IMG/VR virus record: IMGVR_UViG_3300042879_006196
Span: 62,001 to 126,000 of that record
DNA: 64,000 bases
Reading direction: 5' to 3' (one strand)
Shown: positions 2,374 through 22,972 of the stretch, in pieces
Numbering within the stretch: the first letter of the stretch is position 1
Layout: each line of letters starts with the position of its first letter
The notes under the pieces: generated by a model
Told to the model about the DNA's origin: nothing
Databases searched by the model: none
What the model saw: the letters and a program-made list of their open reading frames with translations, nothing else
Made by a program: the position numbers and the translations under genes

Positions 2374-2386
2374 ATCGCCACTTCCC

Positions 2387-4581: not shown

Positions 4582-4643
4582 CCCCCTCCAAAGGGGAGGC
4601 AGATTGTTTTTTCCAGGTTTAACACAATCTGATTATAATAGAT

Positions 4644-6385: not shown

Positions 6386-6503
6386 CACAATCTAAAAACC
6401 ACAATCTGAGAATCACAATCTAAAAACCACAATCTAAAAACCACAATCTAAAAATCACAATCTAAAAACCACAATCTGAGAATCACAATCTGAGAATCAC
6501 AAT
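6386..6503 (+). repeat. 14-bp tandem repeat with CACAATCT core, 8 full copies plus 1 partial
   Basis: CACAATCT at 6386, 6400, 6414, 6428, 6442, 6456, 6470 and 6484; partial at 6498. Confidence 0.95.
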
Positions 6504-6858
6504 TTTTTAGTTTATTTTTTTTATTCTCGGATCATAGGGGGGGTGTTTAAATTTAGGGGGGGTGTTTTAAAAAGGGTGTATAGATATATATACATATAGG
6601 GGTAAATTTTCGTATAATTAATAATGGTATACACGATTTTTCTTTTTCTAGCTATATATACAAATCTTTGTTTACTAGAAGCCTTGATACAATACAAAAC
6701 TTTTGTTTCTCGCTTAGGGTCATATTTAATGATTAAATATTTAAATTTCTTATCGTGGTTAAATTTCTTTACATACACAATCTGTCTTTTAAAGGGATCA
6801 CATTTGATAAATTTTTGATTAAAAAATAATTCCAGAAACACTGTTTTATGCATTTCCC

Positions 6859-6891
6859 CGTAATCTAAGAGCACAAGGATTTCGAATATAA
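6859..6891 (+). pseudogene. Remnant C-terminus of a Trp-repeat paralog
   Basis: Reads RNLRAQGFRI*, matching the ends RNLQAQGFPIKIY* and HNLKAQGFPM*. Confidence 0.6.
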
Positions 6892-6909
6892 ATTTAGTAA
6901 TTTAAGATT

Positions 6910-8466
6910 GTGTGGTATAGATATTGCAGATTAATTATAGCTGGCAAAGAACATATAATTAAAAAGATCATTGGTTATTTTAGAGAACAAGGGATTGGAC
7001 AAGTTGACTTAGATAATCTCCAACACAATCTGAATACCTTAGATAAGAATAATTTATTACCAGCGAGAATAGAACCTAGAAAAGATGGTGTATTTTTTGG
7101 TGATAGATTGTATGAAGATTTTTTAGAATTTCAAGAAATAGTGGATGGATTATATGGAGAATATAAATTAAGACAAAAAACAAAAGAACAAAAGAAATTA
7201 AGAGAAGAAAAAATAGAATTTGTTCCAGGTAAAACATCTGTTTATCCATGTAATAGTGTAAATGATGCGATCAAATATGGGGTTGGTACAGATTGGTGTA
7301 TTTCTCAACCTGGTAATGGAAATTATGATTCATATAGATCCGACTATCAATCTACATTTTATTATGTACAAGATAACACTAGACAATCTGATGATCCTTT
7401 ATCTAGAGTAATGGTGGATATACAAGCAAATGGTGTTGTCAAACTCACTGATATAAATAATACCACTGGTACAATAGCTGAATTTGGTACAGATTGGAAA
7501 AAGTATTTCGAGTATTTGGAAAAAAGTGGTGTAGATATTTCTCAATTTGTTAATAAACCTTTGACACAAGAAGAGATAGAAGAAAATAAGTTGATTGGTA
7601 AAGAAATAAATGATTTGGAGAAATTTGAAAAATTACCATTAGAATATAAATTCAAATACATTGGTCGTGGTCATTTATTAACGACAAAACAATTGGAGTC
7701 TATTATTAATCTTCAATCTGTTCATAGCAATGATGTAAAAAATACATTGATAAAACATTATTTAAAAACAGGAAGATCTTTACCAGCAATTCAAAAATTC
7801 ATTTTATTTGAAAGCAATCAAGGATGGAGAACAACATACATAAGAAGTAGAAAAATAGTAATAGATCAAATTAGAAAAAATTTATTGGATGACGACGAAG
7901 TAGCTCGCGAATTTCTAGATGCTGATGAAAGGGCTCTTTATGAAAATCCATTGAAATCAACAAATATTGTTGTGAAAAATATTGAAGATTTTGATTTTTT
8001 ATTAACTAAAGGTGTAAGTTTAAATCAGTTTAATTGGTCTAGTGTTTCTCAGATTCGTAATTTATCTGAAGATTTTATAAGAGAATATAAAGATAAAGTG
8101 GATTGGCTTGATATTTCTACTTATCCAAGATTATCTGAAGATTTTATCAGAGAATTTCAAGATAAGGTGTACTGGTGGATAATTTCTCAATATCAAACAT
8201 TATCTGAAGATTTTATAAGAGAATTTCAAGATAAGGTAAAATGGGGAACAATTTCTTACACACAGGAATTATCTGAAGATTTTATAAGAGAATTTAAAGA
8301 TAAGGTGGATTGGGAGAAAATTTCCAGATATCAAAAATTATCTGAAGATTTTATAAGAGAATTTAAAGATAAGGTGGATTGGTATTATATACGGTGGAAC
8401 GAGAATATTTCCGATGAAACCAAACGCAATCTGCAAGCACAAGGATTTCCTATAAAAATTTACTAA
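6910..8466 (+). CDS. MWY-start protein with KYGxGTxWC domain and 5 C-terminal 23-aa Trp repeats (paralog 1)
   Basis: LSEDFIREFxDKVxWxxISxxQx units at a 69-nt period (8062, 8131, 8200, 8269, 8338). Confidence 0.9.
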   Translation: MWYRYCRLIIAGKEHIIKKIIGYFREQGIGQVDLDNLQHNLNTLDKNNLLPARIEPRKDGVFFGDRLYEDFLEFQEIVDGLYGEYKLRQKTKEQKKLREEKIEFVPGKTSVYPCNSVNDAIKYGVGTDWCISQPGNGNYDSYRSDYQSTFYYVQDNTRQSDDPLSRVMVDIQANGVVKLTDINNTTGTIAEFGTDWKKYFEYLEKSGVDISQFVNKPLTQEEIEENKLIGKEINDLEKFEKLPLEYKFKYIGRGHLLTTKQLESIINLQSVHSNDVKNTLIKHYLKTGRSLPAIQKFILFESNQGWRTTYIRSRKIVIDQIRKNLLDDDEVAREFLDADERALYENPLKSTNIVVKNIEDFDFLLTKGVSLNQFNWSSVSQIRNLSEDFIREYKDKVDWLDISTYPRLSEDFIREFQDKVYWWIISQYQTLSEDFIREFQDKVKWGTISYTQELSEDFIREFKDKVDWEKISRYQKLSEDFIREFKDKVDWYYIRWNENISDETKRNLQAQGFPIKIY

Positions 8467-8504
8467 TTTTTGAACAAATCATATTTTTTATCGTATAATA
8501 ATAA

Positions 8505-8579
8505 TGCGGGGTGGAGCAGAGGTAGCTTGTCTGGCTCATAACCAGAAGGTCGTGGGTTCAAATCCCTCCCCCGCACCCA
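8505..8579 (+). tRNA. tRNA-Met(CAU), initiator-like scaffold, CCA encoded
   Basis: TGCGGGGTGGAGCAG..GGTAGCT.GTCTGG-CTCATAA-CCAGA..GTGGGTTCAAATCCC..CCCCGCA-C-CCA. Confidence 0.9.
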
Positions 8580-8580
8580 A

Positions 8581-8654
8581 GCTCCGATCGTCTAGCGGTT
8601 TAGGACATCGCTCTTTCACGGCGAAGATCACGGGTTCGAATCCCGTTCGGAGTA
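8581..8654 (+). tRNA. tRNA-Glu(UUC), no encoded CCA
   Basis: GCTCCGA/TCGGAGT acceptor; TCGCT-CTTTCAC-GGCGA anticodon arm; ACGGG-TTCGAAT-CCCGT T arm. Confidence 0.93.
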
Positions 8655-8677
8655 ATTAAAAAAGATTGGAATAAAAT

Positions 8678-9424
8678 ATGTATTTACCTTTATTAGCTTT
8701 TTCCCTTTTCACACAATCTACTTTAGATGACACACAATGTAGAAAGGCATTAAATGAAATTCTCCCTATGATGCGCACAACCAATGCTATGAGTTTTAGA
8801 TTAGAGGGGGAGAATGAATACAAGGGGTTTTTTACAAAATATTCGGGCAGTTTTAAATGGTTCAAAAATGAATCTGTGATAAAGTCAGAGTTAAAGTTAT
8901 CGCGAGATCAGATTGGCTTACAAAGAATTGTGGCTGATGGTAAAAAGATTTGGGCACACAATCTGCAAAGAAATGAATATACAGTGGCTCGTTATTCTTT
9001 AGAATTATCTGTGGGCGAAGATTACATGAAAAGATATATAAATGGTGTAAAGTACCCTGTGCTAGGGATGGGGCAACATTTAATGACACTTGCAGATCAG
9101 GTAGGTTTTGTATCACCTTCTCTCAAAGACTGGATTGGTGGTATTGAGTGGCAGGGAAAATTAGAAATAGATAAAAATAATTCTTTAAGAATTGTGAAGA
9201 GAATTTATCAGATTGTGGCTGATTATCGTTATGTGGTTTGGGAGCTTGAATCATTTGATGAGGGTGTCACATTTAATTTTTCAAGCATAAAGATTTACAA
9301 TAAAAGTTTTGATGGGTCAACCACCACCACATATCTTTATTTGGACGATTGTGTGGGTGCGGATCATTTAGGATTTAAATTTGTTCCTCCATCTGGCAGC
9401 AAAGTATTATGGATAAAAGATTGA
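8678..9424 (+). CDS. Secreted LolA/DUF2092-like beta protein
   Basis: Hydrophobic N-terminus; IVADGKKIWAHN...NEYT and C-terminal FKFVPPSGSKV motifs typical of the LolA fold. Confidence 0.6.
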   Translation: MYLPLLAFSLFTQSTLDDTQCRKALNEILPMMRTTNAMSFRLEGENEYKGFFTKYSGSFKWFKNESVIKSELKLSRDQIGLQRIVADGKKIWAHNLQRNEYTVARYSLELSVGEDYMKRYINGVKYPVLGMGQHLMTLADQVGFVSPSLKDWIGGIEWQGKLEIDKNNSLRIVKRIYQIVADYRYVVWELESFDEGVTFNFSSIKIYNKSFDGSTTTTYLYLDDCVGADHLGFKFVPPSGSKVLWIKD

Positions 9425-9460
9425 GAAGGAAGATTTTTTCTCATTCTATAATACTATACT

Positions 9461-9883
9461 ATGAACAAACACAATCTATTAAACAAAATAGCTTCAATTG
9501 CTACAGAACTCGACGTAAAAGGTTTCACAAAGGAAGCAAAGACCTTGGATAATGTGTTAATTAGAGTGGCGGATATTAATCCTGAAGAATATTGGGATAA
9601 AGAATGGAGAAGAGAGTTTCGTGAAGAAGAAAGAACTATTGTTCCAACAAAAAAAGTTTGGGAGTATGTTAAAAGCGCACACACTAAAGAATTAGAATAC
9701 GCACTTGAAGGTGGCGGCTTAGACGTGAAAAATTTTGCTGAATTTTGCTGGTCTTTAAAAGATGAAAATTTAAACAACATGATCAAAAATAGCCCAGATC
9801 TTAATTGGGCATGGTTGGAAGAAGCATTTATAGATCATTTGGAATATATTCAACATTCTAAGTTTGACTCAGAACCAGAATGA
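9461..9883 (+). CDS. Hypothetical protein with shared N-terminal IASxATELD.KG..KEA tag
   Basis: ORF; tag shared with the genes at 9976 and 20778. Confidence 0.8.
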   Translation: MNKHNLLNKIASIATELDVKGFTKEAKTLDNVLIRVADINPEEYWDKEWRREFREEERTIVPTKKVWEYVKSAHTKELEYALEGGGLDVKNFAEFCWSLKDENLNNMIKNSPDLNWAWLEEAFIDHLEYIQHSKFDSEPE

Positions 9884-9975
9884 TTAGGAGGGAGGCTAAT
9901 TTTACGATTAAGCTTCCCCCGAAAAGGTGCGCTTTTTCTAACGTAAATCAATTTTCACATTTAAAGGAGAAAAAA

Positions 9976-10551
9976 ATGAACAAACACAATCTGCTAAAAC
10001 GAATTGCTTCTGTTGCCACAGAGCTTGATATGAAGGGTTTCACTAAGGAAGCAAAACATTTAGATTCTATGCTTTTAAGGTTGGCTATGGATGATGACAT
10101 GCCTGAAATTGAAAAAAGTATTGATAGTGTCACTCCAACTTTTCAAGATTGGGAAGGTTTAAATGCCTTGAATGGTATTTTGATTAGTGTGCTTGGCGGT
10201 CGTAAAGATTTAGACAAAAATTACTATCATGGTGTTGACATTATCATGGATCTTGTTAATGATATTTTCACTGAGTTGAAAAACTTTAATAAATTAAATG
10301 CTAATGAAAATTTTGAACAAAAACAAGATTTGGGCATGGAAATAAAAATGCTTCTTGACACTGTTAGGGATGAGACAAAAGCTTTAATTAAAGAATTTAG
10401 AATTACTTTAGATATGGGTAGGCAAATAATTTTGGATCATGCTTATGATTTAGTGGACAAATTCAAAGATACAATAGATGATTTGTTGGATATGAGCTCT
10501 CTTGACTTTTTACCTAAAAATGATGAACAGTGGCCTGACAAACTGTATTGA
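9976..10551 (+). CDS. Hypothetical protein with shared N-terminal tag (start moved from 9880)
   Basis: AAGGAG SD before ATG 9976; MNKHNLLKRIASVATELDMKG. Confidence 0.8.
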   Translation: MNKHNLLKRIASVATELDMKGFTKEAKHLDSMLLRLAMDDDMPEIEKSIDSVTPTFQDWEGLNALNGILISVLGGRKDLDKNYYHGVDIIMDLVNDIFTELKNFNKLNANENFEQKQDLGMEIKMLLDTVRDETKALIKEFRITLDMGRQIILDHAYDLVDKFKDTIDDLLDMSSLDFLPKNDEQWPDKLY

Positions 10552-10590
10552 TTAAAAGGAAGAGCACCGCGCAAAATTTAAATATAGATT

Positions 10591-12891
10591 GTGTGGTATA
10601 GATATTGCAGATTAATTATAGCTGGAAAAGAACATATAATTAAAAATGTTATTAATTATTTTAGAGAACAAGGGGAGTCTGAAGTAAATCTAAATGAAAT
10701 CTCACAGAAACTAAATGTTTTAGATAAATCACAAAAATTGCCAATTATTGAAAGAAGAAAAAAAAGTATTTTTTTTAATAATCAAGAATTCACCAAATTT
10801 CTTGACTTTTCAGAAAAAGTGGATCGTTTATTTTCTGAACATTTACGAAATGAAAAAACAAAAGAACAAAAAAAAATACAGAAAGAAGAAAAAACAGAAT
10901 TCATTCCAGGCAAAATATCTGTTTATCCATGCAAAAATGTAAATGATACAATCAAATATGGCGCTGGTACAAGTTGGTGTGTTTCACAGCCTGGTAATAA
11001 CATGTATGATAGTTACAGAAATCAAAGTGCGTCCACATTTTATTACATTCAAGATGGAACAAGAGATTCTAGTGATCCATTATCAAGGGTAATGTTAGAT
11101 GTACAAGATGGCGATGAAATTACATTAACTGACACAGATAATGACACTGGCGCTATAGCTGAATTTGGCACAAATGTAGATGCTTATTTAGATTATTTAG
11201 AAAACAATGGCGTAAACACTGCTCAGTTTGTCAATAAACCTTTGACAAATGAGGAAAGAGAAGAATTTCGAATATTAGGTCAAAGAAATAATGATTTAGA
11301 ATGGTTTGAAAATTTAAGTTTAGATTATAAATTCAAATATATTGGAAGAGGTCATCGTTTAACAGATGAACAGCTTTCATCAATTATAAATTTAGAATCT
11401 GTTGACACAAAAAAGATTGCATTAGAATTAATTAATGATTATGTTAACACAGGCTTAAATTTACCTTTAAATCAACAAAAAATTCTATTTGAAATTAATC
11501 CACAAATTCAAAAAACCTATAAAAGAAGAAGAGCAATTGCAATTGAAGCAATTAAGAAATATTATTTTAATAATACATATGAATTAAAAAATTATGCTTT
11601 ACAAAATAAAGATCTTGAATTGATTGATTCAATTATTGAAGAAAAAGGTATTGAAGCATTCAAAAATGCGAGGGCAGCTCAGCCTGTAATTGAATATTTA
11701 TTATCAAAAGGCTTGGACCCTAGTTATGTGAAATGGCAAGACATGTATTTAGAAAAATTATCAGAAGACTTTATAATCAAATACATCAACTTTTTAGACA
11801 TTAAGCGTATATCTCACTATCAAAAACTATCTGAAGATTTTATAAGAAAATATTCAGATCTTGTTGATTGGCGAAATATTTCATATTTTCAAAAATTGTC
11901 AGAAAATTTTATTGAAGAATTTAAAGATCGCGTAGATTGGCAAGAAATTTCAAGCAGACAAATATTATCTGAAGATTTTATAAGAAAATTTCAAGATAAG
12001 ATAGAACAAAGCAGATCATGGTCTGAAATTACACAATATCAAAATTTATCTGAAGAATTTATGGATGAATTTCAAAATAAATTAGATTGGGAAAAACTTT
12101 CAGATTACCATGAAAATAGAAAATATGGACAGAAACTTTCAATTGAATTTCTTTTAAGGCATAAAGATAAAATTGATTGGGAAACATATTCACGTAAATA
12201 CGGTGCCAATATCGCTGAGGAATATTTGAGAGCTCTCAAATATTATATACACTGGGATAAAGTAAGTTATCATAATGTATCTGATGAATTTTTGTTTGAA
12301 TTTGAAAATTATATAAATTGGAAAAAAGCAGCGAGCACAAAAGAAAATATCCCTGAAATTTTACTCCGAAGACACGCTGATGATTTAAATTGGTATCATA
12401 TTTCAGCTTTCCAAACATTATCTGAAGATTTTATAAGAGATTTTGCTGATCGTTTTAATTGGGTTTTTATTTCTCAACATCAAAAATTATCTGAAGATTT
12501 TATAAGAGAATTTAAAGATAAGGTGGATTGGTATTATATTTCTGAATATCAAACATTATCTGAAGATTTTATAAGAGAATTTCAAGATAAGGTAAAATGG
12601 GGAACAATTTCTGTATATCAAAAATTATCTGAAGATTTTATAAGAGAATTTCAAGATAAGGTAGTTTGGCATTTTATTTGTAGATATCAAACATTATCTG
12701 AAGATTTTATAAGAGAGTTTCAAAATAAGGTATATTGGGCAGAAATTTCTCAAGATCAAAAATTATCTGAAGATTTTATAAGAGAATTTCAAGATCGTGT
12801 AAAATTGCATTATTTATTGCGAAATGAAAACCTTTCTGATGAAATCAAACACAATCTGCAAACAAAAGGTTATCAAATAAAACATTTTTAA
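10591..12891 (+). CDS. MWY-start Trp-repeat protein (paralog 2, about 15 repeats)
   Basis: Same N-terminus and KYGAGTSWC domain as paralog 1; long repeat array. Confidence 0.9.
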   Translation: MWYRYCRLIIAGKEHIIKNVINYFREQGESEVNLNEISQKLNVLDKSQKLPIIERRKKSIFFNNQEFTKFLDFSEKVDRLFSEHLRNEKTKEQKKIQKEEKTEFIPGKISVYPCKNVNDTIKYGAGTSWCVSQPGNNMYDSYRNQSASTFYYIQDGTRDSSDPLSRVMLDVQDGDEITLTDTDNDTGAIAEFGTNVDAYLDYLENNGVNTAQFVNKPLTNEEREEFRILGQRNNDLEWFENLSLDYKFKYIGRGHRLTDEQLSSIINLESVDTKKIALELINDYVNTGLNLPLNQQKILFEINPQIQKTYKRRRAIAIEAIKKYYFNNTYELKNYALQNKDLELIDSIIEEKGIEAFKNARAAQPVIEYLLSKGLDPSYVKWQDMYLEKLSEDFIIKYINFLDIKRISHYQKLSEDFIRKYSDLVDWRNISYFQKLSENFIEEFKDRVDWQEISSRQILSEDFIRKFQDKIEQSRSWSEITQYQNLSEEFMDEFQNKLDWEKLSDYHENRKYGQKLSIEFLLRHKDKIDWETYSRKYGANIAEEYLRALKYYIHWDKVSYHNVSDEFLFEFENYINWKKAASTKENIPEILLRRHADDLNWYHISAFQTLSEDFIRDFADRFNWVFISQHQKLSEDFIREFKDKVDWYYISEYQTLSEDFIREFQDKVKWGTISVYQKLSEDFIREFQDKVVWHFICRYQTLSEDFIREFQNKVYWAEISQDQKLSEDFIREFQDRVKLHYLLRNENLSDEIKHNLQTKGYQIKHF

Positions 12892-12900
12892 TTTAAGATT

Positions 12901-14598
12901 GTGTGGTATAGATATTGCAGATTAATTATAGCTGGCAAAGAACATATAATTAAAAATGTCATTAATTATTTTAGACAAAAAGGCGAAATTGAAGACAATC
13001 TAAATGAAATTTATCGCAAGCTTTTGGATCTTGACAAATCCAACAAAATACAAAATATTGGAATAATAGAAGATAAAGTTAATTTTAATGATAATTCATT
13101 CAATAATTTTATAGATTTTTCAGAAAAAATAGATGAATTACATACAAATTATTTTTGGTTGAAGCAACAAGAAAAATTAAAAAAGGAACAAAAAGAATTA
13201 CAAAAAAATGAAATAGAATTTGTTCCAGGTAAAATATCTGTTTATCCATGTAATGATGTAAGTGATACAATCAAATATGGAGCTGGTACAAGTTGGTGTA
13301 TTTCTAGACCTGGTAATCGCATGTATGATTCATATAGATCCAGCAATCAATCCACATTTTATTATGTGCAAGATGGAACTAGGCAATCTGATGATCCATT
13401 ATCAAGGGTAATGATAGATAGGCAGAAAAATGGTGTTGTCAAGCTCACTGATATTAATAACCGTACTGGCACAATAGCTGAGTTTGGTACAGATTGGCAA
13501 GCATATTTTGACTATTTGGAAAGCAAAGGCGTAAAAACTTCTCAATTTGTTAATAAACCTAGAACACAAGAAGAAATTGAAGAGACTAAAAAATTAGGCA
13601 CAAAAAAAGACAATTTAGTATGGTTTAAAAACTTAACAAACGATGAAAAATCAAAATATATTGGAAGAGGTCACCTATTAACTAATAAACAATTAGAATA
13701 TTTATTATCAAGAGATGATATAGGCAAATTATTAATTCCTCAATATTTAAATACTGGTGTTAGTTTGCCTCCAAAACAAAAAAAAATGTTATTTTCTAAC
13801 AAACAATATGAAAATACATATTATAAAAATATTGAAATTGCACATCAAGAAATTAAAAAATACTGCTTTTCAAAACACAGTGATAATATTGCTTGTGAGT
13901 TAGAAATTTTAATAAATGCATTAGAAACAAATCAATTTGAACTTGTAGAAGAATATCAAAATAGAATTAATTTGTTAGACATTGAAAACTTTGAACCCAT
14001 TCCTAATTTTTATGATGATGAAGATGATGAAGATGAAGATGATGATGAAGATGATGAAGAGGTTATTTTTATCGACGGGCGAGCTTATACTTTTAATTTG
14101 AGTGTTAATATTTCAGTGGAAATGGCTGAATTTTTATACGAAATAGGAGCTGCTGAAGACAATTTAAATGAGATCTGCCACATGCGAGGATTATCTGAAG
14201 ATTTTATAAGAGAATTTCAAGATAAGGTGAATTGGAGGGCAGTATCTGAATATCAAACATTATCTGTAGATTTTATAAGAGAATTTCAAAATAAGATAGA
14301 AGAAACAAGATCTTGGGATAGAATTTCTGGATATCAAAAATTATCTGAAGATTTTATAAGAGAATTTAAAGATAAGTTGAGTTGGGATAGAATTTCTGGA
14401 TATCAAAAATTATCTGAAGATTTTATAAGAGAATTTAAAGATAAGTTGAGTTGGGGGAAAATTTCTTATTTCCAAAAATTATCTGAAGATTTTATAAGAG
14501 AATTTCAGGATAAAGTGAATTGGGAGTATATACAGAGCAACGAAAATATATCTGATGAAACCAAACACAATCTGAAAGCGCAAGGATTTCCGATGTAA
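12901..14598 (+). CDS. MWY-start Trp-repeat protein (paralog 3, 5 repeats, acidic tract)
   Basis: Same architecture; DDEDDEDEDDDEDDEE tract. Confidence 0.9.
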   Translation: MWYRYCRLIIAGKEHIIKNVINYFRQKGEIEDNLNEIYRKLLDLDKSNKIQNIGIIEDKVNFNDNSFNNFIDFSEKIDELHTNYFWLKQQEKLKKEQKELQKNEIEFVPGKISVYPCNDVSDTIKYGAGTSWCISRPGNRMYDSYRSSNQSTFYYVQDGTRQSDDPLSRVMIDRQKNGVVKLTDINNRTGTIAEFGTDWQAYFDYLESKGVKTSQFVNKPRTQEEIEETKKLGTKKDNLVWFKNLTNDEKSKYIGRGHLLTNKQLEYLLSRDDIGKLLIPQYLNTGVSLPPKQKKMLFSNKQYENTYYKNIEIAHQEIKKYCFSKHSDNIACELEILINALETNQFELVEEYQNRINLLDIENFEPIPNFYDDEDDEDEDDDEDDEEVIFIDGRAYTFNLSVNISVEMAEFLYEIGAAEDNLNEICHMRGLSEDFIREFQDKVNWRAVSEYQTLSVDFIREFQNKIEETRSWDRISGYQKLSEDFIREFKDKLSWDRISGYQKLSEDFIREFKDKLSWGKISYFQKLSEDFIREFQDKVNWEYIQSNENISDETKHNLKAQGFPM

Positions 14599-14634
14599 AT
14601 TTAGAAATCATACATCATTTTAAATATCTATAAA

Positions 14635-14964
14635 CTAGTTAAAATCAATTTTTGCATCGAGAGAAAAACCTACAATTTTTCTTCCAATGGGATTCCACCA
14701 AGGTTTATTATAAATTGCCTTCACATTTGAATATGACCTAGATAACCCTTGGCATTCTAAAAACTCCTCTAATTTAATTATGGTCGTTGTGGATGAATGA
14801 GAGCATACAAAATCCACAGCATAGCTACCTGAATGAGACAAAGAAGGAATGATTTTAATTTGATCTACACTGTAATTAACTCCACTTACTACTTTAATAA
14901 TTTTGTGAATTTCGTGAAAGTTATATGAAAAATGTTTAGGGATATACATAATATTTTTATACAA
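14635..14964 (-). CDS. Hypothetical protein
   Basis: ORF coupled to the upstream gene. Confidence 0.6.
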   Translation of the reverse strand: MYKNIMYIPKHFSYNFHEIHKIIKVVSGVNYSVDQIKIIPSLSHSGSYAVDFVCSHSSTTTIIKLEEFLECQGLSRSYSNVKAIYNKPWWNPIGRKIVGFSLDAKIDFN

Positions 14965-15622
14965 TTGAACGAATGTAGTCTATAAATTCACCTTGTTTTT
15001 TCATAGAATTTTCAAGCTCCATGCATGAACACGATGTGCCCCAATATTCTTTAGGAGCAGCTTTTAAATAATCAAAATCAGATTCGTAATTACCAATGTG
15101 TTCTGAGTACCAATTTTTTCTATCTTTTCTCACTGAAGAAATGTGGTTACAATAAATTGGATACATATTCAAAGATTCTTTTAATTCATGAAAATGATTT
15201 CTTCTATTGAGAAGATCTTCTCTGTAGTGTGATAAATCTAAACAAATTCCTGCGAAATGTTCAAGCTGCAATCTTGTCAATACTCTAGAATTTTCAGCTA
15301 ATATATAATGCCTGTAGCTATATATATCACTTGTCACAAAAACATCTTGGTGAATTCCATGCAAATTGAACCATTCTGTGCTAAAATTATTTAAGCAAAA
15401 ATCCAATTCTTCAGGAGTGGAATCAATTCTAATATGCACAAGCGGAATTACACAATCTCCCAGATCTTTTAATCTTTGCATTAACTTCATACGATCATCT
15501 TTGACATGCATGCCAGTTAAAAAAAGCCCAAATTCTCTCAAGCTTGAATTATTTTCTACTTCATTTAATTGTATTTCTGTTATTTCGAAATTTGATGTGG
15601 TTATTGATGGTATTATTTTCAT
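14957..15622 (-). CDS. TIM-barrel (xylose isomerase/AP endonuclease 2-like) protein
   Basis: VH, FNLH, EN, CLDLSH, HIS and ELE metal-ligand pattern. Confidence 0.5.
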   Translation of the reverse strand: MKIIPSITTSNFEITEIQLNEVENNSSLREFGLFLTGMHVKDDRMKLMQRLKDLGDCVIPLVHIRIDSTPEELDFCLNNFSTEWFNLHGIHQDVFVTSDIYSYRHYILAENSRVLTRLQLEHFAGICLDLSHYREDLLNRRNHFHELKESLNMYPIYCNHISSVRKDRKNWYSEHIGNYESDFDYLKAAPKEYWGTSCSCMELENSMKKQGEFIDYIRSIV

Positions 15623-15785
15623 ATTGTTTCTCTAAAATTTTTCGCTCTAATGAATCAGATAAAAGATTGGCTTTATCAATGTAATCTTGAGTTGACATTT
15701 CTTTTTTTTGTTTTTTATTGTTGCTTTTAATATACGTGACAACGGCGGCACATGCAAGCAAAGAAATTACAAAATTTGGTTTCAC
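15561..15785 (-). CDS. Small membrane-anchored protein
   Basis: N-terminal hydrophobic helix followed by a Lys-rich stretch. Confidence 0.5.
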   Translation of the reverse strand: MKPNFVISLLACAAVVTYIKSNNKKQKKEMSTQDYIDKANLLSDSLERKILEKQYENNTINNHIKFRNNRNTIK

Positions 15786-15822
15786 AGTATATATTTTACT
15801 GGAAATGTGTCAACAAAACATT

Positions 15823-18474
15823 TTAGATTGTGTTAAATTTTGTTAAGTTTTTTTTCATCCACTGAAGGGCTTCAGCTTTATCGTTAAACTCTCCATTCAG
15901 CTGTGCTTTCCAGGCTTCATCTAACATATCTTTGATATCTCTTCCTTTCAGATTAGTGTTTTCAACAACATCATAGCCATTAATAAACGCCACTTCTCTT
16001 TGCATTCTATTTTGCAACCATTCTAATGCTGTTTCTCTGTTTTTCATTCTTGGATCATGATCCAAAATCATTTTTCTATGTTCTTTCAAAATTTGCCCGA
16101 TTATTGGACCACCTTTTTTCGTGTAAACCATAATATCTCTACCTTGTAAAAGATCTTGTGCTTTATCTTCAAATACACCGAGCTCATTTGCTTTTTCAAT
16201 CATTGTTTTTGCTTCATCTGGTAGTTTTTTTTCTAAAGGTGGTCTACCTGAATGATCTGCCTCAATTAAATAAGAAAGCATTTTAAGATTTGAAGGATAA
16301 ATTTTTTCTGCTAAATTTTTCACAAAAGAATCTTGTTTGGAAGTGTTTGAGTGATGAATGTGTGCAAGATGGTATTCTACCAAAGGTACCACTTGATCTA
16401 TCACTTTCTTGGGAGCCCCTATTGATTCTAAAAACGCTCTAGCTTTAGGTCCGCCTTTTTCTTCATGACCATGAGATGTAATTCTATCTTTTCCTTTTTT
16501 ATTAGTTACAGCTGTCGTTTCAGGTTTTGCAAAATCATGTGCAAGAGCCGCATAAATTAACACTTCTCTTTGTTCAGGAGAAAGATTTTCTCTGTCAGCA
16601 ATTCTAGCTGCTTCATTCATAACATGTGCAGTATGAACGTCCACGCTGCCCTCAGGGTGCCACTCCGAATCTTGTGGGGTATCTTTCAGATCATGTATTT
16701 CAGGGAAATTAGCAGACCAACCAGTGGTATAAAGAAAATCTAATGCCTTTCCTGGTTCAATACCTTTTGTTACAAGTTTTTTAAATTCTTCATAAATTCT
16801 CTCTTTAGGGAGATGCTGGAATTCTTCTCTTATAGATTGTGCTAATTCAGCTGTTTCAGGTGCAATATCAAAACCAAATCTAGATGCAAATTGCATGCCT
16901 CTTAAAACTCTCAATGGATCTTCAGCAAAAGCATCAGATGTATGTCTTAATATTTTATTAGTAAGATCTTGTCTACCGTTATATGGATCCACTATTTCAT
17001 GCGTGATAGGATCATATGAAATAGCATTAATTGTAAAATCTCTTCTAGCAGCAGCCTCTTCAGGTGTAAGATCTGACCTCACCTCTACATTAAAATCTTT
17101 ATGCCCCACTCCTGCTTTAGAATCAAGTCTGGGTAATGAAAAATCAAAATCCATACCATCTTTGCCAACAAATTTAATCACTCCAAATGATTGTCCAACA
17201 AGATCTGCTTTACCATACTTAGACAAAATCTGATTCAATTCATCATAATTAAGCCCATACACTTCAAAATCAATATCCTTTGGTGATTTACCTAAAATGG
17301 CATCTCTTACAGCTCCTCCAACAACAAGTGCCCTACCTCCTGAATTTGAAATATCAGAAAGCAAATCATACACATAATCTGGAAGTGATATCAGTAAATT
17401 TTGTTTTTCACCGTATTTTTTCAAATTAAAAGATACATTTCTTACATAAGCCAATTTATGAATTTTCCTCTCAACATAATCTACGTATTCTTGTAAATAT
17501 ATAGCATTAGATCTTTTTGTTTCTGGATTAATTTTATTTTTTTCTGATTCCAATGCGGACAAAAGATTTCTATAGGCTTCCAATTCGCCTATAGAATATC
17601 TTTCTTTTTCAAAAATTTTATATGCATCTGAAATAATTTTTTTGACAGGTTCAGGCATTATAATTATTGGTTTAGTTCCTTTTTGATTGAAGATATAATC
17701 GTATAATCCTTTTTTAAGGAAAAGCAGATATTCTTTTCCAAAATAATCTCTATGAGTATAATTTGGCAAATATTGTCTATGTTTTAAAACTATATCATTA
17801 ATACAATATTCAATGACATCATGCACAGATTTTCTGACAGATTGATTGTGAAGCTTCGAATAATTTTCTACGAACTCTACATTTAGGATATTGTTGTGTT
17901 TCTGAATTAAGCCTTGTAAATTAGCCCTTGCTTCTTCAGGTGATTGATAATAATAGGGAAATTTCTGCTGATCTTCTCTAGAAAGTTGGCTTTGATGTTT
18001 TTTATCTGTTCTATCTAAAAGTTTTTCATTTCTCCACCAATCTGTTTTGCTTTTTTGTTTACTAATAACATGGGTAATTTCATGAGCCATGTTAGATTTA
18101 ATATAAATTAAATCTTTATTTTTGTCCGATGCAGCATTAATGCCAATTTCTTTGTCAATAGTGGCTTTTGCGTGTTGTTTTTTATTTTTATCAAAATAAA
18201 TAAATACGGGTATTTTTAAATCTAAGGCTTTTGACTCTAACACACAATCTAAAAATAAAGTTTGAATCTTTTGATAAATATCACCCCATAAAAGAAGTTT
18301 TTTTTCATAAGCAACAGTAGAAGTATCAGTGGCATTTTGTAATTCTTCTCTCATAATTGATTCTTTTTCAGAGATCTCTAAAAAAGCTGGATTTGTAATC
18401 ATGGCATATATATTATTTGCCACTGAATCAAAATTATCAAAGTATTGTGTTACTGAGCTATACTTATACCACAC
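15823..18474 (-). CDS. cca: CCA tRNA nucleotidyltransferase with HD domain, fused to an N-terminal HEXXH domain
   Basis: VGGAVRD..DIDFE, RRDFTINA, EDPLRVLR, HPEG..H and HDFAK motifs; N-terminal MWY and AHEITH. Confidence 0.9.
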   Translation of the reverse strand: MWYKYSSVTQYFDNFDSVANNIYAMITNPAFLEISEKESIMREELQNATDTSTVAYEKKLLLWGDIYQKIQTLFLDCVLESKALDLKIPVFIYFDKNKKQHAKATIDKEIGINAASDKNKDLIYIKSNMAHEITHVISKQKSKTDWWRNEKLLDRTDKKHQSQLSREDQQKFPYYYQSPEEARANLQGLIQKHNNILNVEFVENYSKLHNQSVRKSVHDVIEYCINDIVLKHRQYLPNYTHRDYFGKEYLLFLKKGLYDYIFNQKGTKPIIIMPEPVKKIISDAYKIFEKERYSIGELEAYRNLLSALESEKNKINPETKRSNAIYLQEYVDYVERKIHKLAYVRNVSFNLKKYGEKQNLLISLPDYVYDLLSDISNSGGRALVVGGAVRDAILGKSPKDIDFEVYGLNYDELNQILSKYGKADLVGQSFGVIKFVGKDGMDFDFSLPRLDSKAGVGHKDFNVEVRSDLTPEEAAARRDFTINAISYDPITHEIVDPYNGRQDLTNKILRHTSDAFAEDPLRVLRGMQFASRFGFDIAPETAELAQSIREEFQHLPKERIYEEFKKLVTKGIEPGKALDFLYTTGWSANFPEIHDLKDTPQDSEWHPEGSVDVHTAHVMNEAARIADRENLSPEQREVLIYAALAHDFAKPETTAVTNKKGKDRITSHGHEEKGGPKARAFLESIGAPKKVIDQVVPLVEYHLAHIHHSNTSKQDSFVKNLAEKIYPSNLKMLSYLIEADHSGRPPLEKKLPDEAKTMIEKANELGVFEDKAQDLLQGRDIMVYTKKGGPIIGQILKEHRKMILDHDPRMKNRETALEWLQNRMQREVAFINGYDVVENTNLKGRDIKDMLDEAWKAQLNGEFNDKAEALQWMKKNLTKFNTI

Positions 18475-18522
18475 AATCTAGTATTAAAAATTTTTAAGTT
18501 ATATACCTCGTATTTAAAATAT

Positions 18523-18795
18523 ATGAAAGAATTCACTGTGACATTTGATAAGTCAAATTTTTCTAGAGAAAATGCAATTATGAAGTCCAAGAGAATCAAT
18601 TTAAAATTGAACACAATTTTACTTTGGCTAGGTAGACATGTTGTGTATGATCATTATTTAAATTCAGAATGGTTTGGCGGAAAAGAAGATGGCACAGATT
18701 ATGTGTTTTGGTTTAAATTAGAAAAAGATAGAGATAGAGCAGAAATATTTATCAATGAAATAATTGAAAATGGAATTCCAAGAATTAGAAACTAA
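18523..18795 (+). CDS. Hypothetical protein
   Basis: ORF with a CGTAT promoter motif 14 nt upstream. Confidence 0.65.
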   Translation: MKEFTVTFDKSNFSRENAIMKSKRINLKLNTILLWLGRHVVYDHYLNSEWFGGKEDGTDYVFWFKLEKDRDRAEIFINEIIENGIPRIRN

Positions 18796-18839
18796 ATTTA
18801 TATTCCAACATCTGATTGTTCTGTTTCAAATGGTAATGG

Positions 18840-19442
18840 TTATCCAAAATCTTCTGTTTGTTTTTCAATAGATTTATTTACAGGTTCTTGAGGTGGTTGA
18901 TCAGGTTTCTGTGCAGGTTTTTGAGGTGGTTGTGGAATTAAATATCTGTTAAAATTTTCTTTCATATCTCTTAAAATTTGCATGGGGTTAGTTCCTGGCA
19001 TCCAAAATACTTGCGATTGAAATTCTTTTCCATCTATCCCTGTAAGTTTTACTATACCATTATTTATCTTTACTTTATACGAATATAAATACGTTTCTAA
19101 TTTATATTTGTTTGGGTCTTCAGTTTCATTTACACCTCTTTGTGGCAATGTTTTCTGATTTGTTTGTTGTGGGTTAAAATTATTGGTTGGTGCAGGATTT
19201 GTTCGTGGGGGCATTGCTGGTGGCGTCGAACGAGTTGCAGACAAGGCAGGTGTGGGAGAATTTGTTTGTGTAGTTGAAGGTTTTAGAGGTGGCTTCAGAT
19301 TAGCATACCCAAGACCCCCAGTGAGTTTTTTTAAATAAAAATCATTGTCTTTATTTTCTGCCACAATTCTTGGAATTACCACGCTTCCATCAGGCAATTT
19401 TACCGCTTGATTTATCACTGTTTGACAAAATCTGTACCACAC
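18840..19442 (-). CDS. MWY-start Pro/Gln-rich protein
   Basis: MWYRFC start; low-complexity linkers. Confidence 0.75.
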   Translation of the reverse strand: MWYRFCQTVINQAVKLPDGSVVIPRIVAENKDNDFYLKKLTGGLGYANLKPPLKPSTTQTNSPTPALSATRSTPPAMPPRTNPAPTNNFNPQQTNQKTLPQRGVNETEDPNKYKLETYLYSYKVKINNGIVKLTGIDGKEFQSQVFWMPGTNPMQILRDMKENFNRYLIPQPPQKPAQKPDQPPQEPVNKSIEKQTEDFG

Positions 19443-19520
19443 AATCTGATATTAAATAAATTTCACATTATTTCCTTCGAATGAATTCAGCAAATTCGTG
19501 TATGTTTTTTCGTATATAAA

Positions 19521-21368: not shown

Positions 21369-21439
21369 ATTCTTTTTTTCTTGATGACAACTTATATTAC
21401 CTTGAAGGAATTTGAAGTGAGATTGTGTAATTAGATTGT

Positions 21440-22972
21440 ATGAGTGGTTGTGTTCCTTGCATGAAGGCAAATGAAAATATTTTCAGCTTGATTGATTATG
21501 CAAATAGCTTAGACATTAAAAATCCTAAACTCGCATCAAAAATTGATCAGATTGTGTTGGGGATGGTGAAGGAAAGTCAAGCTACAGACAACAGTTTAGC
21601 TTTTCAAGGACCAGGTACTAATGTGGAAAGAACTAAAGTAGAACAAACAGACAACAGTTTAGCTTTTCGAGGACCAGGTACTAATGTAAATAGAAAGCAA
21701 GATTCATCTGAAAAAAAAGGTGGTTTAGGGGAATCTTTGTCGAAAGTTGCACCTTCAGCAGCTTATATTGGTTTAACTGGAATGCAATTTGTTGCAAATA
21801 AATGGTGGGATGAGCTTTTTATGGAACGTAGATTTTATTATTTATATAGTCTTGCAAATCAACAAAAAGACCCGACAAAAAAGAAACAACTATTCAAAGA
21901 AGCAGCATTTGCCTTTCAAACAATAGAAAAAAACCACCCACAACTTTTTAACAAAATTGTAGAAAATTTAAATTTGAAAAACGTAGATAGCCTAAATGGA
22001 TTTTTTTTGTTACAGTTAAAAACTGTAAAAAAAGAACTCAATAACTTTCAAAAAACTTTAAAAGCAATGGGCGGATATGAAAATCTTATACCAAGTGTAG
22101 CAAAATTAATTGAAGAATTGCAAGACAAAATGCTTTCTAATAATGTTCCAAATGGACAAGTACAATTTTACGTGGAAAAATTAAAAAAAGCTTTAGCAGG
22201 AAAAAATTTCGAAGATGCCTATAAATTTATAAGTAATTGGAGACAGCCTAACACATTAATGAATACTATTGCTAAAAATCTGACACAAAGAAACCCCCAA
22301 GGAGTCATTATTGCTGATGGCGCGGAAGTTTTAAAAAAAACAACAAATGCTACTATGGTTGTATCAGAGAAAGAAGTAAGTAAGTTGGGGAAATTCCTTG
22401 AAGAAATTACATTAGCATTTCCATTTTTAAAAGATTATATTAAACCGATAAAAGTGTTTGGAGGTATTGTAATAAATCTGGGTTTGGGTTTAGCACAATT
22501 AGTTGACGTAATTAATATGATGCGCACTGGTCAAGCTAGAGGTGCTAAATTTTGGTGTCAGGTATTTGGAGCACTTTCATCTTTTATTCAATCAGCTTCT
22601 TTTATACCCGCTGTTATGGTAGCCACAGAAGGAATTTCTGCAGGAGTTGGTGCTTTTATGAAAGCTATAGATTTAATAATAAATGGTGCTTACTGTACTT
22701 CTGTTTTTTTCTTTTCAGCTAGTGATGCCAAAAATCTTCAAGGATCTATCACACAATCTCAACTATCTCCTAATGATTTGAATGTTGCTAATCAATTAGT
22801 AAACATTAAAAATAAAAAAATGATCAATGATCAATTTAAAGGAATGGTTGCTAATAATAAAATTGAGAATCCTAATGAAGTGGGGGCATATTTGAGAAAA
22901 CAATTATTAACTAAGCCGATTGCCCAACCTGGACAGCCAGTTGCTCAACCAGGACAACCTGCTGTAGCATAA
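21440..22972 (+). CDS. Large hypothetical protein with tag-like N-terminus and hydrophobic C-terminal helices
   Basis: YANSLD..NPKLASKID; duplicated TDNSLAF.GPGTNV; Gly/Ala-rich hydrophobic region. Confidence 0.75.
   Translation: MSGCVPCMKANENIFSLIDYANSLDIKNPKLASKIDQIVLGMVKESQATDNSLAFQGPGTNVERTKVEQTDNSLAFRGPGTNVNRKQDSSEKKGGLGESLSKVAPSAAYIGLTGMQFVANKWWDELFMERRFYYLYSLANQQKDPTKKKQLFKEAAFAFQTIEKNHPQLFNKIVENLNLKNVDSLNGFFLLQLKTVKKELNNFQKTLKAMGGYENLIPSVAKLIEELQDKMLSNNVPNGQVQFYVEKLKKALAGKNFEDAYKFISNWRQPNTLMNTIAKNLTQRNPQGVIIADGAEVLKKTTNATMVVSEKEVSKLGKFLEEITLAFPFLKDYIKPIKVFGGIVINLGLGLAQLVDVINMMRTGQARGAKFWCQVFGALSSFIQSASFIPAVMVATEGISAGVGAFMKAIDLIINGAYCTSVFFFSASDAKNLQGSITQSQLSPNDLNVANQLVNIKNKKMINDQFKGMVANNKIENPNEVGAYLRKQLLTKPIAQPGQPVAQPGQPAVA

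What the first reader, a model, noticed from the sequence alone, without database searches (positions are those of the whole stretch)
6910..19442. Shared MWY(R/K) N-terminus on unrelated proteins, overlapping the DNA 9-mer
Seen: five genes from three unrelated families (three Trp-repeat genes, the CCA fusion and a Pro-rich protein) begin AGATT-GTG-TGG-TA, so the GTG start sits inside AGATTGTGT and encodes MWY(R/K). All belong to the AGG-34 promoter class. Inference: either a short capsid-targeting peptide (by analogy to the T4 internal-protein CTS) for proteins injected with the DNA, or a DNA operator over the TSS, or both.
Basis: partly seen in the sequence, partly recalled or inferred. Interest (0 to 1): 0.65.

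Follow-up and report, generated by a model that had tools for sequence, protein, structure and literature searches.

The report
Portable MWY tag on phage proteins
In an uncultured 347-kb jumbo phage and its relatives, about ten otherwise unrelated proteins per genome begin with the same six-residue peptide (Met-Trp-Tyr-Arg/Lys-aromatic-small), most likely an address label that loads them into the virus particle for delivery with the DNA; its overlap with the repeated DNA 9-mer is a separable extra found only in this lineage.

Summary
Five window genes start AGATT-GTG-TGG-TA, each with AGG exactly 31 nt before the start codon. Three are paralogues, so the window holds three independent families. 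Genome-wide there are 10 such genes in about 6 families, against 0.24 expected.

The shared part is a hexapeptide, MWY[RK][YF][CS]. It is selected as protein:
- Codons 4-6 vary synonymously or conservatively.
- Orthologues keep MWY where the 9-mer is lost and the start is ATG.
- One orthologue keeps the 9-mer but lost the Trp codon.
- Three distant jumbo phages without the 9-mer each carry 5-10 MWY[KR]x[AS] proteins, mostly unrelated to those here. In two of them the AGG promoter is also absent, and about half the genes have Shine-Dalgarno-like leaders.

Tagged proteins include an ART-PolyVal ADP-ribosyltransferase, an InPase and CCA-adding enzymes. The nearest relatives of the InPase are domains inside giant polyvalent proteins, which are predicted to be packaged in virions. 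The AGG(-34) class also drives endolysin and head-tail adaptor genes, so it looks late.

A T4-CTS-like virion-loading tag is therefore the best reading, but it is unproven: there is no proteomics, no mapped transcription start and no known receptor. The 9-mer is a separate DNA signal (336 copies, iteron arrays, early-promoter inverted pairs).

The parts
6876..6913 (+). AGG(-34)/TAATTT(-12..-7) promoter plus 9-mer AGATTGTGT (6905-6913) over the GTG start of Trp-repeat gene 1
6910..8466 (+). Trp-repeat protein 1 (518 aa), N-terminus MWYRYCRLIIAGKEHII; C-terminal phrog_3532 repeats
10557..10594 (+). AGG(-34)/TAAATA promoter plus 9-mer over the start of Trp-repeat gene 2
10591..12891 (+). Trp-repeat protein 2 (766 aa), MWYRYCRLIIAGKEHII
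12867..12904 (+). AGG(-34)/TAATTT promoter plus 9-mer over the start of Trp-repeat gene 3
12901..14598 (+). Trp-repeat protein 3 (565 aa), MWYRYCRLIIAGKEHII
15823..18474 (-). 883-aa fusion: MWYKYS tag, 340-aa unassigned N-domain containing an HEITH motif, then a CCA-adding/poly(A)-polymerase head, RNA-binding and HD domains
18471..18508 (-). 9-mer (18471-18479), TAATAC -10 (18481-18486) and AGG (18506-18508) of the CCA-fusion promoter
18840..19442 (-). Pro-rich 200-aa protein, MWYRFCQTV; its orthologue in L227 is MWYKFSQLK without the 9-mer
19439..19476 (-). 9-mer (19439-19447), TAATAT -10 (19449-19454) and AGG (19474-19476) of the Pro-rich gene promoter
9427..9883 (+). Comparison case: AGG(-34) promoter with an ATG start and a non-MWY N-terminus (MNKHNL, 140 aa). 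A reverse 9-mer lies in codons 3-6 and is conserved in L227.
21406..22972 (+). Comparison case: AGG(-34) promoter, ATG start, MSGCVPC (510 aa). The 9-mer lies at -20..-12, and likewise in the L227 orthologue.

Best explanation
MWY[RK]-aromatic/aliphatic-[A/C/S] is a portable N-terminal peptide tag used by a clade of uncultured jumbo phages. About ten otherwise unrelated proteins per genome carry it.

Most likely mechanism (inferred, not shown): the genes are expressed late. In this phage they are read from a phage-sigma-type promoter whose geometry (AGG at -34, TAAnnT at -12..-7) puts the transcription start on the start codon, which would give leaderless GUG mRNAs. The exposed N-terminal hexapeptide then docks the protein to a component of the assembling head or virion, so the protein is packaged and enters the next host with the DNA. 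This is the role the 10-residue capsid targeting sequence plays for T4 internal proteins.

On this reading the tag replaces the covalent fusion into giant 'polyvalent' proteins that other phages use for the same effector domains.

The AGATTGTGT 9-mer over the start is a second, independent DNA-level signal. It is found in this genome and in three related records (G001, L194, L227). It fits here because its 3' half, GTGT, is compatible with GTG-T(GG).
For: SHOWN, protein-level selection:
- Codons 4-6 differ between families while the residue class is kept: R = AGA/CGG/AGG, K = AAG/AAA, Y/F = TAT/TTT/TTC, C/S = TGC/TGT/AGC/TCA.
- Position 4 is R/K in 11 of 13 independent families (P = 1e-9). Position 6 is A/C/S in 9 of 13 (P = 1e-5).

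SHOWN, tag without the 9-mer:
- The G001 CCA orthologue reads tatataatATG-TGG-TAT.
- The PHP-like orthologues in G001, L193 and L195 lack the 9-mer at the start.
- The L227 orthologue of the Pro-rich protein reads aaaactGTGTGGTAT.

SHOWN, 9-mer without the tag:
- The L227 CCA orthologue keeps AGG-N31 and AGATTGTGT but reads GTG-TAT, so the Trp codon is gone.
- G000 302447(-) has the promoter, the 9-mer and GTG but starts MLD.

SHOWN, tag without the leaderless promoter:
- In G010 and G006, 15 MWY[KR] genes were examined. None of the 15 has AGG at -34, and 7 of 15 have Shine-Dalgarno-like AAGG/AGGA/GAGG at -20..-4.
- About half of the roughly 24 AGG-N31 genes in G000 have other N-termini.

SHOWN, clade-wide and on different proteins:
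- G009 has 8 or more genuine MWY starts, all ATG. Only the PHP-like family, and weakly the CCA N-domain, is shared with G000.
- Enrichment is 9 vs 0.24, 3 vs 0.06 and 12 vs 0.38 expected in G000, G001 and G009.
- In 77 homologue clusters of the 224-aa PHP-like protein, nearly all start MWY or VWY. In the 26-sequence alignment Trp2 is invariant.
- AlphaFold gives residues 1-9 pLDDT below 50 in an otherwise confident model with mean pLDDT 86. A conserved but unstructured end is what a docking motif looks like.

CIRCUMSTANTIAL, for packaging:
- Tagged proteins include PF18760 ART-PolyVal (34.5 bits, above cut-off), a weak LPD26 match and DnaJ in G010; PF18823 InPase in G009 (E = 2e-39, with PHROG hits to minor head and DarB-like proteins); and a CCA enzyme directly behind the tag in G006.
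- Of the best 150 of 10,829 InPase relatives, 110 are 1000 aa or longer, with the domain internal. The two closest stand-alone ones start MWFREA and MWYRTA.
- Iyer et al. 2017 (PMC5512222) describe InPase and MPTase as domains of phage polyvalent proteins predicted to be packaged in the virion.
- The AGG(-34) class also drives an endolysin, a 'protease' (phrog_3677) and the operon of the PHP-like gene, a head-tail adaptor and a 1574-aa protein. It therefore looks late. Enzymes that would be useful early but are made late are typically virion cargo.
- Tagged genes cluster, as T4 ip genes do: window 6.9-19.4 kb here, and four in a row at G010 270-274 kb.
Against: - No virion proteome, no N-terminomics and no mapped transcription start exist.
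- No receptor has been identified. The major capsid protein was not found with PF05065 or PF07068.
- No conserved protease-cleavage motif follows the tag.
- No MuF-type head anchor is present (PF04233 gives no match).
- The 'late' assignment rests on three or four annotated genes.
- Some cargo identities come from distant relatives, not from this window. The window's own tagged proteins (Trp-repeat, Pro-rich) have unknown function.
- One orthologue (L227 CCA fusion) has lost the Trp and apparently survives.
- In the PHP-like family, WY is also kept when it is preceded by 1-4 extra residues (MSWYRK, MRLSWY). Part of the WY conservation in that one family could therefore be family-specific.
- A leaderless mRNA beginning with GUG is unusual.
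Confidence: 0.5

Rival explanations
1. The hexapeptide is a genuine protein-level docking motif, but for something other than the capsid. Candidates are a phage chaperone or J-protein system, a timed protease or adaptor, a tail or baseplate assembly factor, or a host target shared by all tagged proteins.
For: All the evidence for protein-level selection and portability applies equally. One tagged protein in G010 is itself a DnaJ-domain protein. The PHP-like tagged gene heads a head-tail adaptor and tail-like operon rather than a head-core operon.
Against: This reading does not explain why the cargo is enriched in domains otherwise embedded in virion-delivered polyvalent proteins. It also does not explain why early-useful enzymes would sit behind a late-looking promoter.
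Confidence: 0.25
2. The conservation is at nucleotide level. RTGTGGTAY would be the initial transcribed sequence or 5' end that the AGG(-34) holoenzyme, or leaderless translation, needs. MWY would be its by-product.
For: - Trp has one codon and Tyr two, so residues 2-3 cannot be separated from the DNA by degeneracy.
- AGG-N31-start spacing is strict: 24 sites at N = 31 against 0-6 at other spacings in G000.
- In G009 the early -10 element TGGTATACT resembles TGTGGTATA.
Against: - About half of the AGG(-34) genes start with other codons.
- The G010 and G006 tagged genes lack the promoter and often have Shine-Dalgarno-like leaders.
- Positions 4-6 are conserved as residue classes, not as bases.
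- Tyr-to-Phe is the only substitution seen at position 3.
- MSWY and MRLSWY variants shift the bases by 3-12 nt but keep WY.
Confidence: 0.07
3. Neutral hitch-hiking. Because promoter and start codon are fused in leaderless genes, copying a promoter cassette carries the first few codons onto new genes, and the peptide itself does nothing.
For: - The four Trp-repeat paralogues share 17 identical N-terminal residues and near-identical DNA, which shows that cassette-like conservation exists.
- The tag co-occurs with one promoter class in G000, G001, L193, L195 and L227.
Against: - Trp2 is invariant and Tyr3 is at least 90% conserved across homologues down to 37% identity.
- The tag persists in G009, G010 and G006 on different proteins with different upstream DNA.
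- Residue-class conservation at positions 4 and 6 indicates purifying selection.
Confidence: 0.08
4. The 9-mer is an operator over the transcription start, and the shared N-terminus is merely its translation.
For: - Seven of the 10 G000 MWY starts have the exact 9-mer at -5..+4. One more has it shifted by 2 nt, and one has a 1-mismatch copy.
- The 9-mer is about 6-fold denser in intergenic DNA than in coding DNA. It forms inverted pairs around the -35 region of early promoters and forms iteron arrays.
Against: - The 9-mer covers only GTG-T, so it cannot dictate GG-TAY or codons 4-6.
- The tag and the 9-mer separate in both directions.
- Phages without the 9-mer have the tag.
- 240 of the 336 copies lie inside ORFs, in all frames.
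Confidence: 0.05

Closest known systems
T4 capsid targeting sequence (CTS) of internal proteins IPI/IPII/IPIII (PMC9026906, section 2.6)
   Same: A short N-terminal peptide is shared by otherwise dissimilar, fast-evolving, clustered accessory proteins. The first roughly 10 residues suffice for targeting in T4. The cargo includes host-takeover enzymes: T4 Alt is a packaged ADP-ribosyltransferase, and a tagged ART-PolyVal is found here in G010.
   Different: There is no sequence resemblance and the phage lineage is different, with no T4-type Gp23 or S77 protease matches. No cleavage site was recognised after the tag. Packaging is untested here. In this lineage the tag is welded to a leaderless GTG start.
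Phage polyvalent proteins (Iyer, Burroughs, Anand, de Souza, Aravind 2017; PMC5512222)
   Same: The effector domain repertoire overlaps: InPase, ART-PolyVal and a possible LPD26. These are inferred to be delivered with the DNA.
   Different: There, the domains are fused into 1000-7000-aa polypeptides and are often anchored by MuF. Here they are separate small proteins that each carry the hexapeptide, and no MuF domain is found.
Encapsulin cargo-loading peptides (from general knowledge, not tested here)
   Same: A short terminal peptide docks diverse cargo to the inside of an HK97-fold shell.
   Different: Those peptides are usually C-terminal with a different consensus, and belong to a non-viral compartment.
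Leaderless mRNAs and phage-sigma promoter classes
   Same: The spacing between promoter elements and start codon is fixed (AGG-N31-start), and the phage encodes three sigma-70-like proteins.
   Different: The transcription start is not mapped. GUG as a 5'-terminal start codon is unusual. The promoter is not needed for the tag in more distant relatives.

Membership tests
CTS-type virion targeting peptide | Short N-terminal peptide shared by otherwise unrelated proteins of one phage | tested here: met
   BLASTP similarity between the families is limited to residues 1-10. There are 10 genes in about 6 families in G000, and the same holds in G009, G010 and G006.
CTS-type virion targeting peptide | Tagged proteins are present in proheads or virions, and this depends on the tag | not testable with these tools
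CTS-type virion targeting peptide | Tag removed by the prohead protease at a consensus site | tested here: inconclusive
   No common motif is visible downstream of the hexapeptide in the listed N-termini. No S77 protease was found. A phrog_3677 'protease' is present.
CTS-type virion targeting peptide | Late expression | tested here: inconclusive
   The same promoter class drives an endolysin, a protease and a head-tail adaptor operon. There are no expression data.
Polyvalent protein | Two to 15 effector domains in one giant polypeptide | tested here: not met
   Tagged proteins are 88-1028 aa with at most two recognised modules.
Polyvalent protein | Characteristic domains (InPase, ART-PolyVal, LPD, MPTase) | tested here: met
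   PF18823 at E = 2e-39. PF18760 at 34.5 bits, above the 31.2-bit cut-off. LPD26 is below cut-off. The HEITH motif in the CCA-fusion N-domain matches no MPTase model.
Phage_Mu_F / SPP1 gp7 head anchor | Match to PF04233 | tested here: not met
   No match in the genome at E <= 1. The PPVHEGCRC resemblance in the 105-aa tagged protein was a recollection only.
Leaderless transcription unit | Promoter elements at a fixed distance from the start codon | tested here: met
   AGG-N31-start with TA at -12: 24 sites at N = 31 against 0-6 at N = 24-39. Of the 14 MWY genes of the G000 lineage, 13 have AGG at -34..-32; the G001 105-aa orthologue is offset by 1 nt.
Leaderless transcription unit | Mapped 5' end at the start codon | not testable with these tools
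Tryptophan-repeat gene family (phrog_3532) | HMM match to the repeat region | tested here: met
   E = 3e-44, 1e-110 and 2e-40. tblastn hits a 'tryptophan repeat gene family protein' of phage BpSp. Distant members lack the N-domain and the tag.
CCA-adding enzyme / poly(A) polymerase family | PolyA_pol head, RNA-binding and HD domains | tested here: met
   PF01743 at 2e-21, PF12627 at 5e-7, PF01966 at 1e-7; phrog_2244 at 2e-80.
PHP phosphoesterase (224-aa tagged protein, outside the window) | PHP fold and metal-binding His motif | tested here: inconclusive
   Foldseek matches RNase AM and TM0559 PHP at E = 4e-8, TM about 0.5. However, the DLHVH of distant homologues reads DLRVY in this lineage.

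The most novel reading that the evidence does not exclude
A sequence-defined N-terminal hexapeptide (MWY[KR]-hydrophobic-[A/S/C]) is a modular virion-loading signal used across a clade of uncultured freshwater-type jumbo phages. It lets each phage inject a changeable set of about ten separate effectors (ADP-ribosyltransferase, pyrophosphatase, CCA-adding enzyme, J-protein, Trp-repeat proteins) instead of one giant polyvalent protein. If so, the tag predicts the injected proteome of these phages from sequence alone and could be used to load foreign proteins.
Probability: 0.45. Interest if true: 0.8.

Novelty: new variant of a known kind. Interest (0 to 1): 0.7.

Why it matters
Which proteins a phage injects together with its DNA is unknown for almost all uncultured phages. 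It matters for understanding counter-defence and host takeover.

If this tag is a loading signal, it gives a sequence rule that lists the injected set of a whole clade of 300-480-kb phages. It also shows an alternative to polyvalent fusion proteins, and offers a short handle for packaging foreign proteins.

Independently of function, this is a clean case where an overlapping DNA motif and a peptide motif could be pulled apart by comparative genomics.

Tried and rejected
- An exact 14-mer scan of viral contigs for AGATTGTGTGGTAT gave 119 or more single, unrelated hits. It was uninformative apart from re-finding G001.
- Single-protein related-loci searches for the 224-aa and 151-aa proteins found nothing. 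The alignment-based search worked.
- The idea that the 105-aa tagged protein is a MuF remnant was dropped, because PF04233 has no match.
- The idea that the CCA-fusion N-domain is a polyvalent-type zincin is unsupported. Only an HEITH motif and a weak BLAST link to G009's 232-aa tagged protein exist, and there is no Pfam match.
- T4-type protease (PF03420), terminase_6N, HK97 capsid and Gp23 models found nothing, so no head proteins were available as candidate receptors.
- No cultured phage carries the PHP-like protein.
- Records behind the ENA and JGI loci are not held, so they could not be scanned whole.
No transcription-start or expression data were obtained, and read laying was not used.
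- Complex prediction was not used, because no specific partner could be named.
- Absence of a Shine-Dalgarno sequence at the MWY genes is not informative, since only 18% of this phage's genes have one.
Full report
WHAT THE WINDOW IS

The window is bases 62,001-126,000 of a 347,392-bp IMG/VR virus record (G000) with 33.6% G+C. It is a jumbo phage. It encodes tRNAs, a DnaE-type polymerase and three sigma-70-like proteins.

CHECK OF THE OBSERVATION

AGATTGTGTGGTA occurs exactly at window 6905(+), 10586(+), 12896(+), 18479(-) and 19447(-). With one mismatch allowed there are 9 sites against 0.08 expected. Each exact copy opens a long ORF at its GTG, of 518, 766, 565, 883 and 200 aa, and a stop codon lies 1-3 codons upstream.

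The three Trp-repeat genes match phrog_3532, the 'tryptophan repeat gene family' of Bacillus phages G and BpSp and Listeria LPJP1. They are paralogues whose first 40 nt are identical. The 883-aa protein carries a CCA-adding/poly(A)-polymerase head, an RNA-binding domain and an HD domain behind an unassigned 340-aa domain. BLASTP finds no similarity between the families beyond the first 6-10 residues.

Genome-wide there are ten such genes:
- a fourth Trp-repeat paralogue at 303,189;
- a 105-aa protein at 172,150;
- a 151-aa protein at 309,113, where the 9-mer is degenerate (AAATTGTGT);
- a 224-aa PHP-like protein at 168,257, where the 9-mer is shifted by 2 nt.

MWY starts number 9 against 0.24 expected (P = 6e-12), while internal WY dipeptides are at expectation. 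The shared peptide is six residues long: MWY[RK][YF][CS].

PROMOTER GEOMETRY

All ten G000 genes have AGG at -34..-32, and most have TAAnnn at -12..-7 relative to the first base of the start codon. So do their orthologues in G001, L193, L195 and L227, except that the G001 105-aa orthologue is offset by 1 nt.

Counting AGG-N(d)-start sites with TA at -12 gives 24 at d = 31 against 0-6 for every other d from 24 to 39. This is the geometry of a sigma-70-family promoter whose transcription start falls on the start codon. Leaderless, or nearly leaderless, mRNAs are therefore inferred.

About half of the d = 31 genes do not start with MWY. They include an endolysin, a phrog_3677 protease and an 834-aa protein that has the 9-mer and GTG but reads MLD. 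The PHP-like MWY gene heads an operon with a head-tail adaptor (phrog_195 / Mu Gp36) and a 1574-aa protein, in G000 and in three relatives. The class therefore looks late. That is an inference from a few annotations.

IS THE CONSERVATION IN THE DNA OR IN THE PROTEIN?

Five lines of evidence point to the protein.

1. Codons 4-6 change while residue classes stay. R is AGA, CGG or AGG. K is AAG or AAA. Y/F is TAT, TTT or TTC. C/S is TGC, TGT, AGC or TCA. Across 13 independent families, position 4 is R/K in 11 (P = 1e-9) and position 6 is A/C/S in 9 (P = 1e-5).

2. The tag survives loss of the 9-mer.
- In G001, a 166-kb relative that shares the genome-wide 9-mer, the CCA orthologue starts tatataat-ATG-TGG-TAT, and the PHP-like orthologue starts aatctgt-GTG-TGG.
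- L193 and L195, which lack 9-mer enrichment, have aagagt-GTG-TGG-TAC.
- In L227 the orthologue of the Pro-rich protein (37% identity, E = 7e-6) starts aaaact-GTG-TGG-TAT.

3. The 9-mer survives loss of the tag. The L227 CCA orthologue (48% identity) keeps AGG-N31 and AAGATTGTGT but reads GTG-TAT-AAA, giving MYKFSS.

4. A search with the 224-aa protein returned 77 homologue clusters down to 37% identity. Nearly all begin MWY or VWY, Tyr-to-Phe is the only substitution at position 3, and Trp2 is invariant in a 26-sequence alignment. AlphaFold nevertheless leaves residues 1-9 below pLDDT 50 in a confident model with mean pLDDT 86. Foldseek assigns the fold to PHP.

5. Distant jumbo phages that lack the 9-mer still carry many tagged proteins.
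- They were reached through the PHP-like protein at 36-42% identity.
- G009 (441 kb) has at least 8, all with ATG starts, reading MWYR/K-x-A.
- In G010 (300 kb), 10 of 13 RTGTGGTAY sites are ORF starts reading MWY[KR][LIFK][AS].
- G006 has at least 5.
- Only the PHP-like family is clearly shared between the G000 and G009 tagged sets.
- In G010 and G006, none of 15 tagged genes has AGG at -34, and 7 have Shine-Dalgarno-like elements. The tag therefore depends neither on the leaderless promoter nor on being at the 5' end of the mRNA.

WHAT THE TAG IS LIKELY FOR

The identifiable cargo is telling.
- G009: a stand-alone InPase (PF18823, E = 2e-39), with PHROG hits to minor head protein and DarB-like antirestriction families.
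- G010: an ART-PolyVal ADP-ribosyltransferase above Pfam's cut-off, a weak LPD26 match and a DnaJ protein.
- G006: a CCA-enzyme head domain directly behind the tag.
- This window: the CCA fusion.

An exhaustive HMMER search with the tagged InPase found 10,829 relatives. Of the best 150, 110 are 1000 aa or longer with the domain internal (median length 2,097 aa). The two closest stand-alone ones begin MWFREA and MWYRTA.

Iyer et al. 2017 describe these domains as parts of phage polyvalent proteins predicted to be packaged and delivered into the host (PMC5512222). T4 offers the mechanistic precedent: a 10-residue N-terminal capsid targeting sequence on dissimilar internal proteins (PMC9026906).

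The supporting points are the late-looking promoter, the clustering of tagged genes, the conserved but disordered N-terminus and the cargo repertoire. Together they make a virion-loading tag the best-supported reading. I put it at about 0.5, and I put the weaker claim 'a portable protein-level N-terminal signal' at about 0.85.

Against it:
- there is no proteome, no receptor and no recognised cleavage site;
- there is no MuF anchor;
- the capsid protein was not found;
- the window's own Trp-repeat and Pro-rich cargo has unknown function.

THE 9-MER

AGATTGTGT is the most over-represented 9-mer of the genome, with 336 copies, 46 of them in the window. Of these, 240 lie inside ORFs in all frames and both orientations, with no flanking context except C at -1. 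The 96 intergenic copies are about 6-fold denser.

The intergenic copies include:
- inverted pairs around the -35 region of about 23 early promoters of the form ...TTTCCAGGTTTA-ACACAATCT-GATTATAAT-AGAT-ATG;
- a 14-bp-period array of 8.4 copies at window 6386-6503.

This looks like the site of an abundant phage DNA-binding protein. At the MWY promoters it occupies -5..+4 in 7 of 10 G000 genes, but in only 1 of 3 in G001. It spans just GTG-T of the coding sequence, so it cannot account for the peptide. It may add regulation there, which was not tested.

VERDICT

The peptide reading is supported as a protein-level tag, and the capsid-targeting purpose is plausible but unproven. The operator reading does not explain the shared N-terminus. 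By kind, this is a new variant of a known principle (CTS-like targeting) in an unstudied phage clade.

Noticed in passing
whole window; e.g. 345-4630 (minus-strand copies), 6285-6393, 21420, 57816: AGATTGTGT is the most over-represented 9-mer of the genome: 336 copies, 46 in the window against 0.8 expected. Of these, 240 lie inside ORFs in every frame and both orientations, with only C at -1 as context. Relatives G001, L194 and L227 share it; G002-G006, G009 and G010 do not. Its function is unknown; a site for an abundant phage DNA-binding protein is the likeliest reading.
   Followed up: partly
window 6386-6503 (inside a non-coding stretch of about 800 bp, 6100-6900): An iteron-like tandem array: 8.4 copies of CACAATCTAAAAAC with a 14-bp period, carrying the 8-mer core of the 9-mer. 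It is flanked by G8 runs and TATATATA tracts, just upstream of the first Trp-repeat promoter. It could be an origin or a regulatory hub. A second array with a 46-bp period lies at G000 33.19-33.35 kb.
   Followed up: no
window 345-4630 and G000 38-67 kb: About 23 near-identical early-type promoters have the form terminator hairpin (CTCCAAAGGGGAGG), AGATTGTGT, TTTCCAGGTTTA, ACACAATCT, GATTATAAT, AGAT, ATG. TATAAT lies only 4 nt before the ATG, so these genes also look leaderless. The inverted 9-mer pair brackets the -35 region like an operator.
   Followed up: partly
G000 14-33 kb (outside the window): Fifty-four tandem mini-ORFs of 39-67 aa all start ATG-ATT-AAT-ACA-GAT-TGT-GTG (MINTDCV, with the 9-mer in codons 4-7). 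They consist of 12-nt repeats GAT-CAG-GTG-TGG ([DN]QVW[YD]...), often end KVFR, and the stop overlaps the next start (ATGA). The repeat unit CAGGTGTGGTAT contains the same GTGTGGTAT as the MWY starts. It is unclear whether this is a coding family or a DNA repeat array.
   Followed up: no
G000 167,583-168,257 (-), homologues P0001-P0077: The tagged 224-aa protein has a PHP fold. The metal-binding motif DLHVH of its distant homologues reads DLRVY in this lineage, so the protein is probably catalytically dead and structural. It is always the first gene of the head-tail adaptor operon.
   Followed up: partly
G009 (IMGVR_UViG_3300029922_000001), whole record: This distant relative has its own top 9-mer, AGGTATACT (119 copies). 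It appears to be an extended -10 element placed 6 nt before ATG starts, giving leaderless early genes. First-start ORF calling there yields false 'MRYT' and 'MWYT...M' N-termini.
   Followed up: partly
window 15823-18474 (-), residues about 130-140: The unassigned 340-aa N-domain of the CCA fusion contains an HEITH (HExxH) motif. It shows a weak BLAST link (E = 0.003) to a 232-aa MWY-tagged protein of G009 that weakly matches SprT-like. It may be a zincin peptidase, but no Pfam model matches.
   Followed up: partly
window 2128-2201, 8505-8654; 57943-58662: There are tRNA-Arg(TCT), tRNA-Met and tRNA-Glu genes; the latter two lie directly after Trp-repeat gene 1. A sigma-70-like gene also lies in the window, and two more sigma genes are at G000 319-321 kb.
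   Followed up: no
L227 4795-4980 and 7743-8330 (related contig): A relative carrying the 9-mer encodes a ribosomal protein S21 homologue (PF01165) and a protein with an Fe/Mn superoxide dismutase C-terminal domain.
   Followed up: no
G000 217,034-226,243 (+): A 3069-aa ORF with only a short 'head decoration / virion structural' PHROG match lies directly upstream of the AGG(-34)-driven phrog_3677 protease. It starts MSKRTP, so it is not tagged.
   Followed up: no
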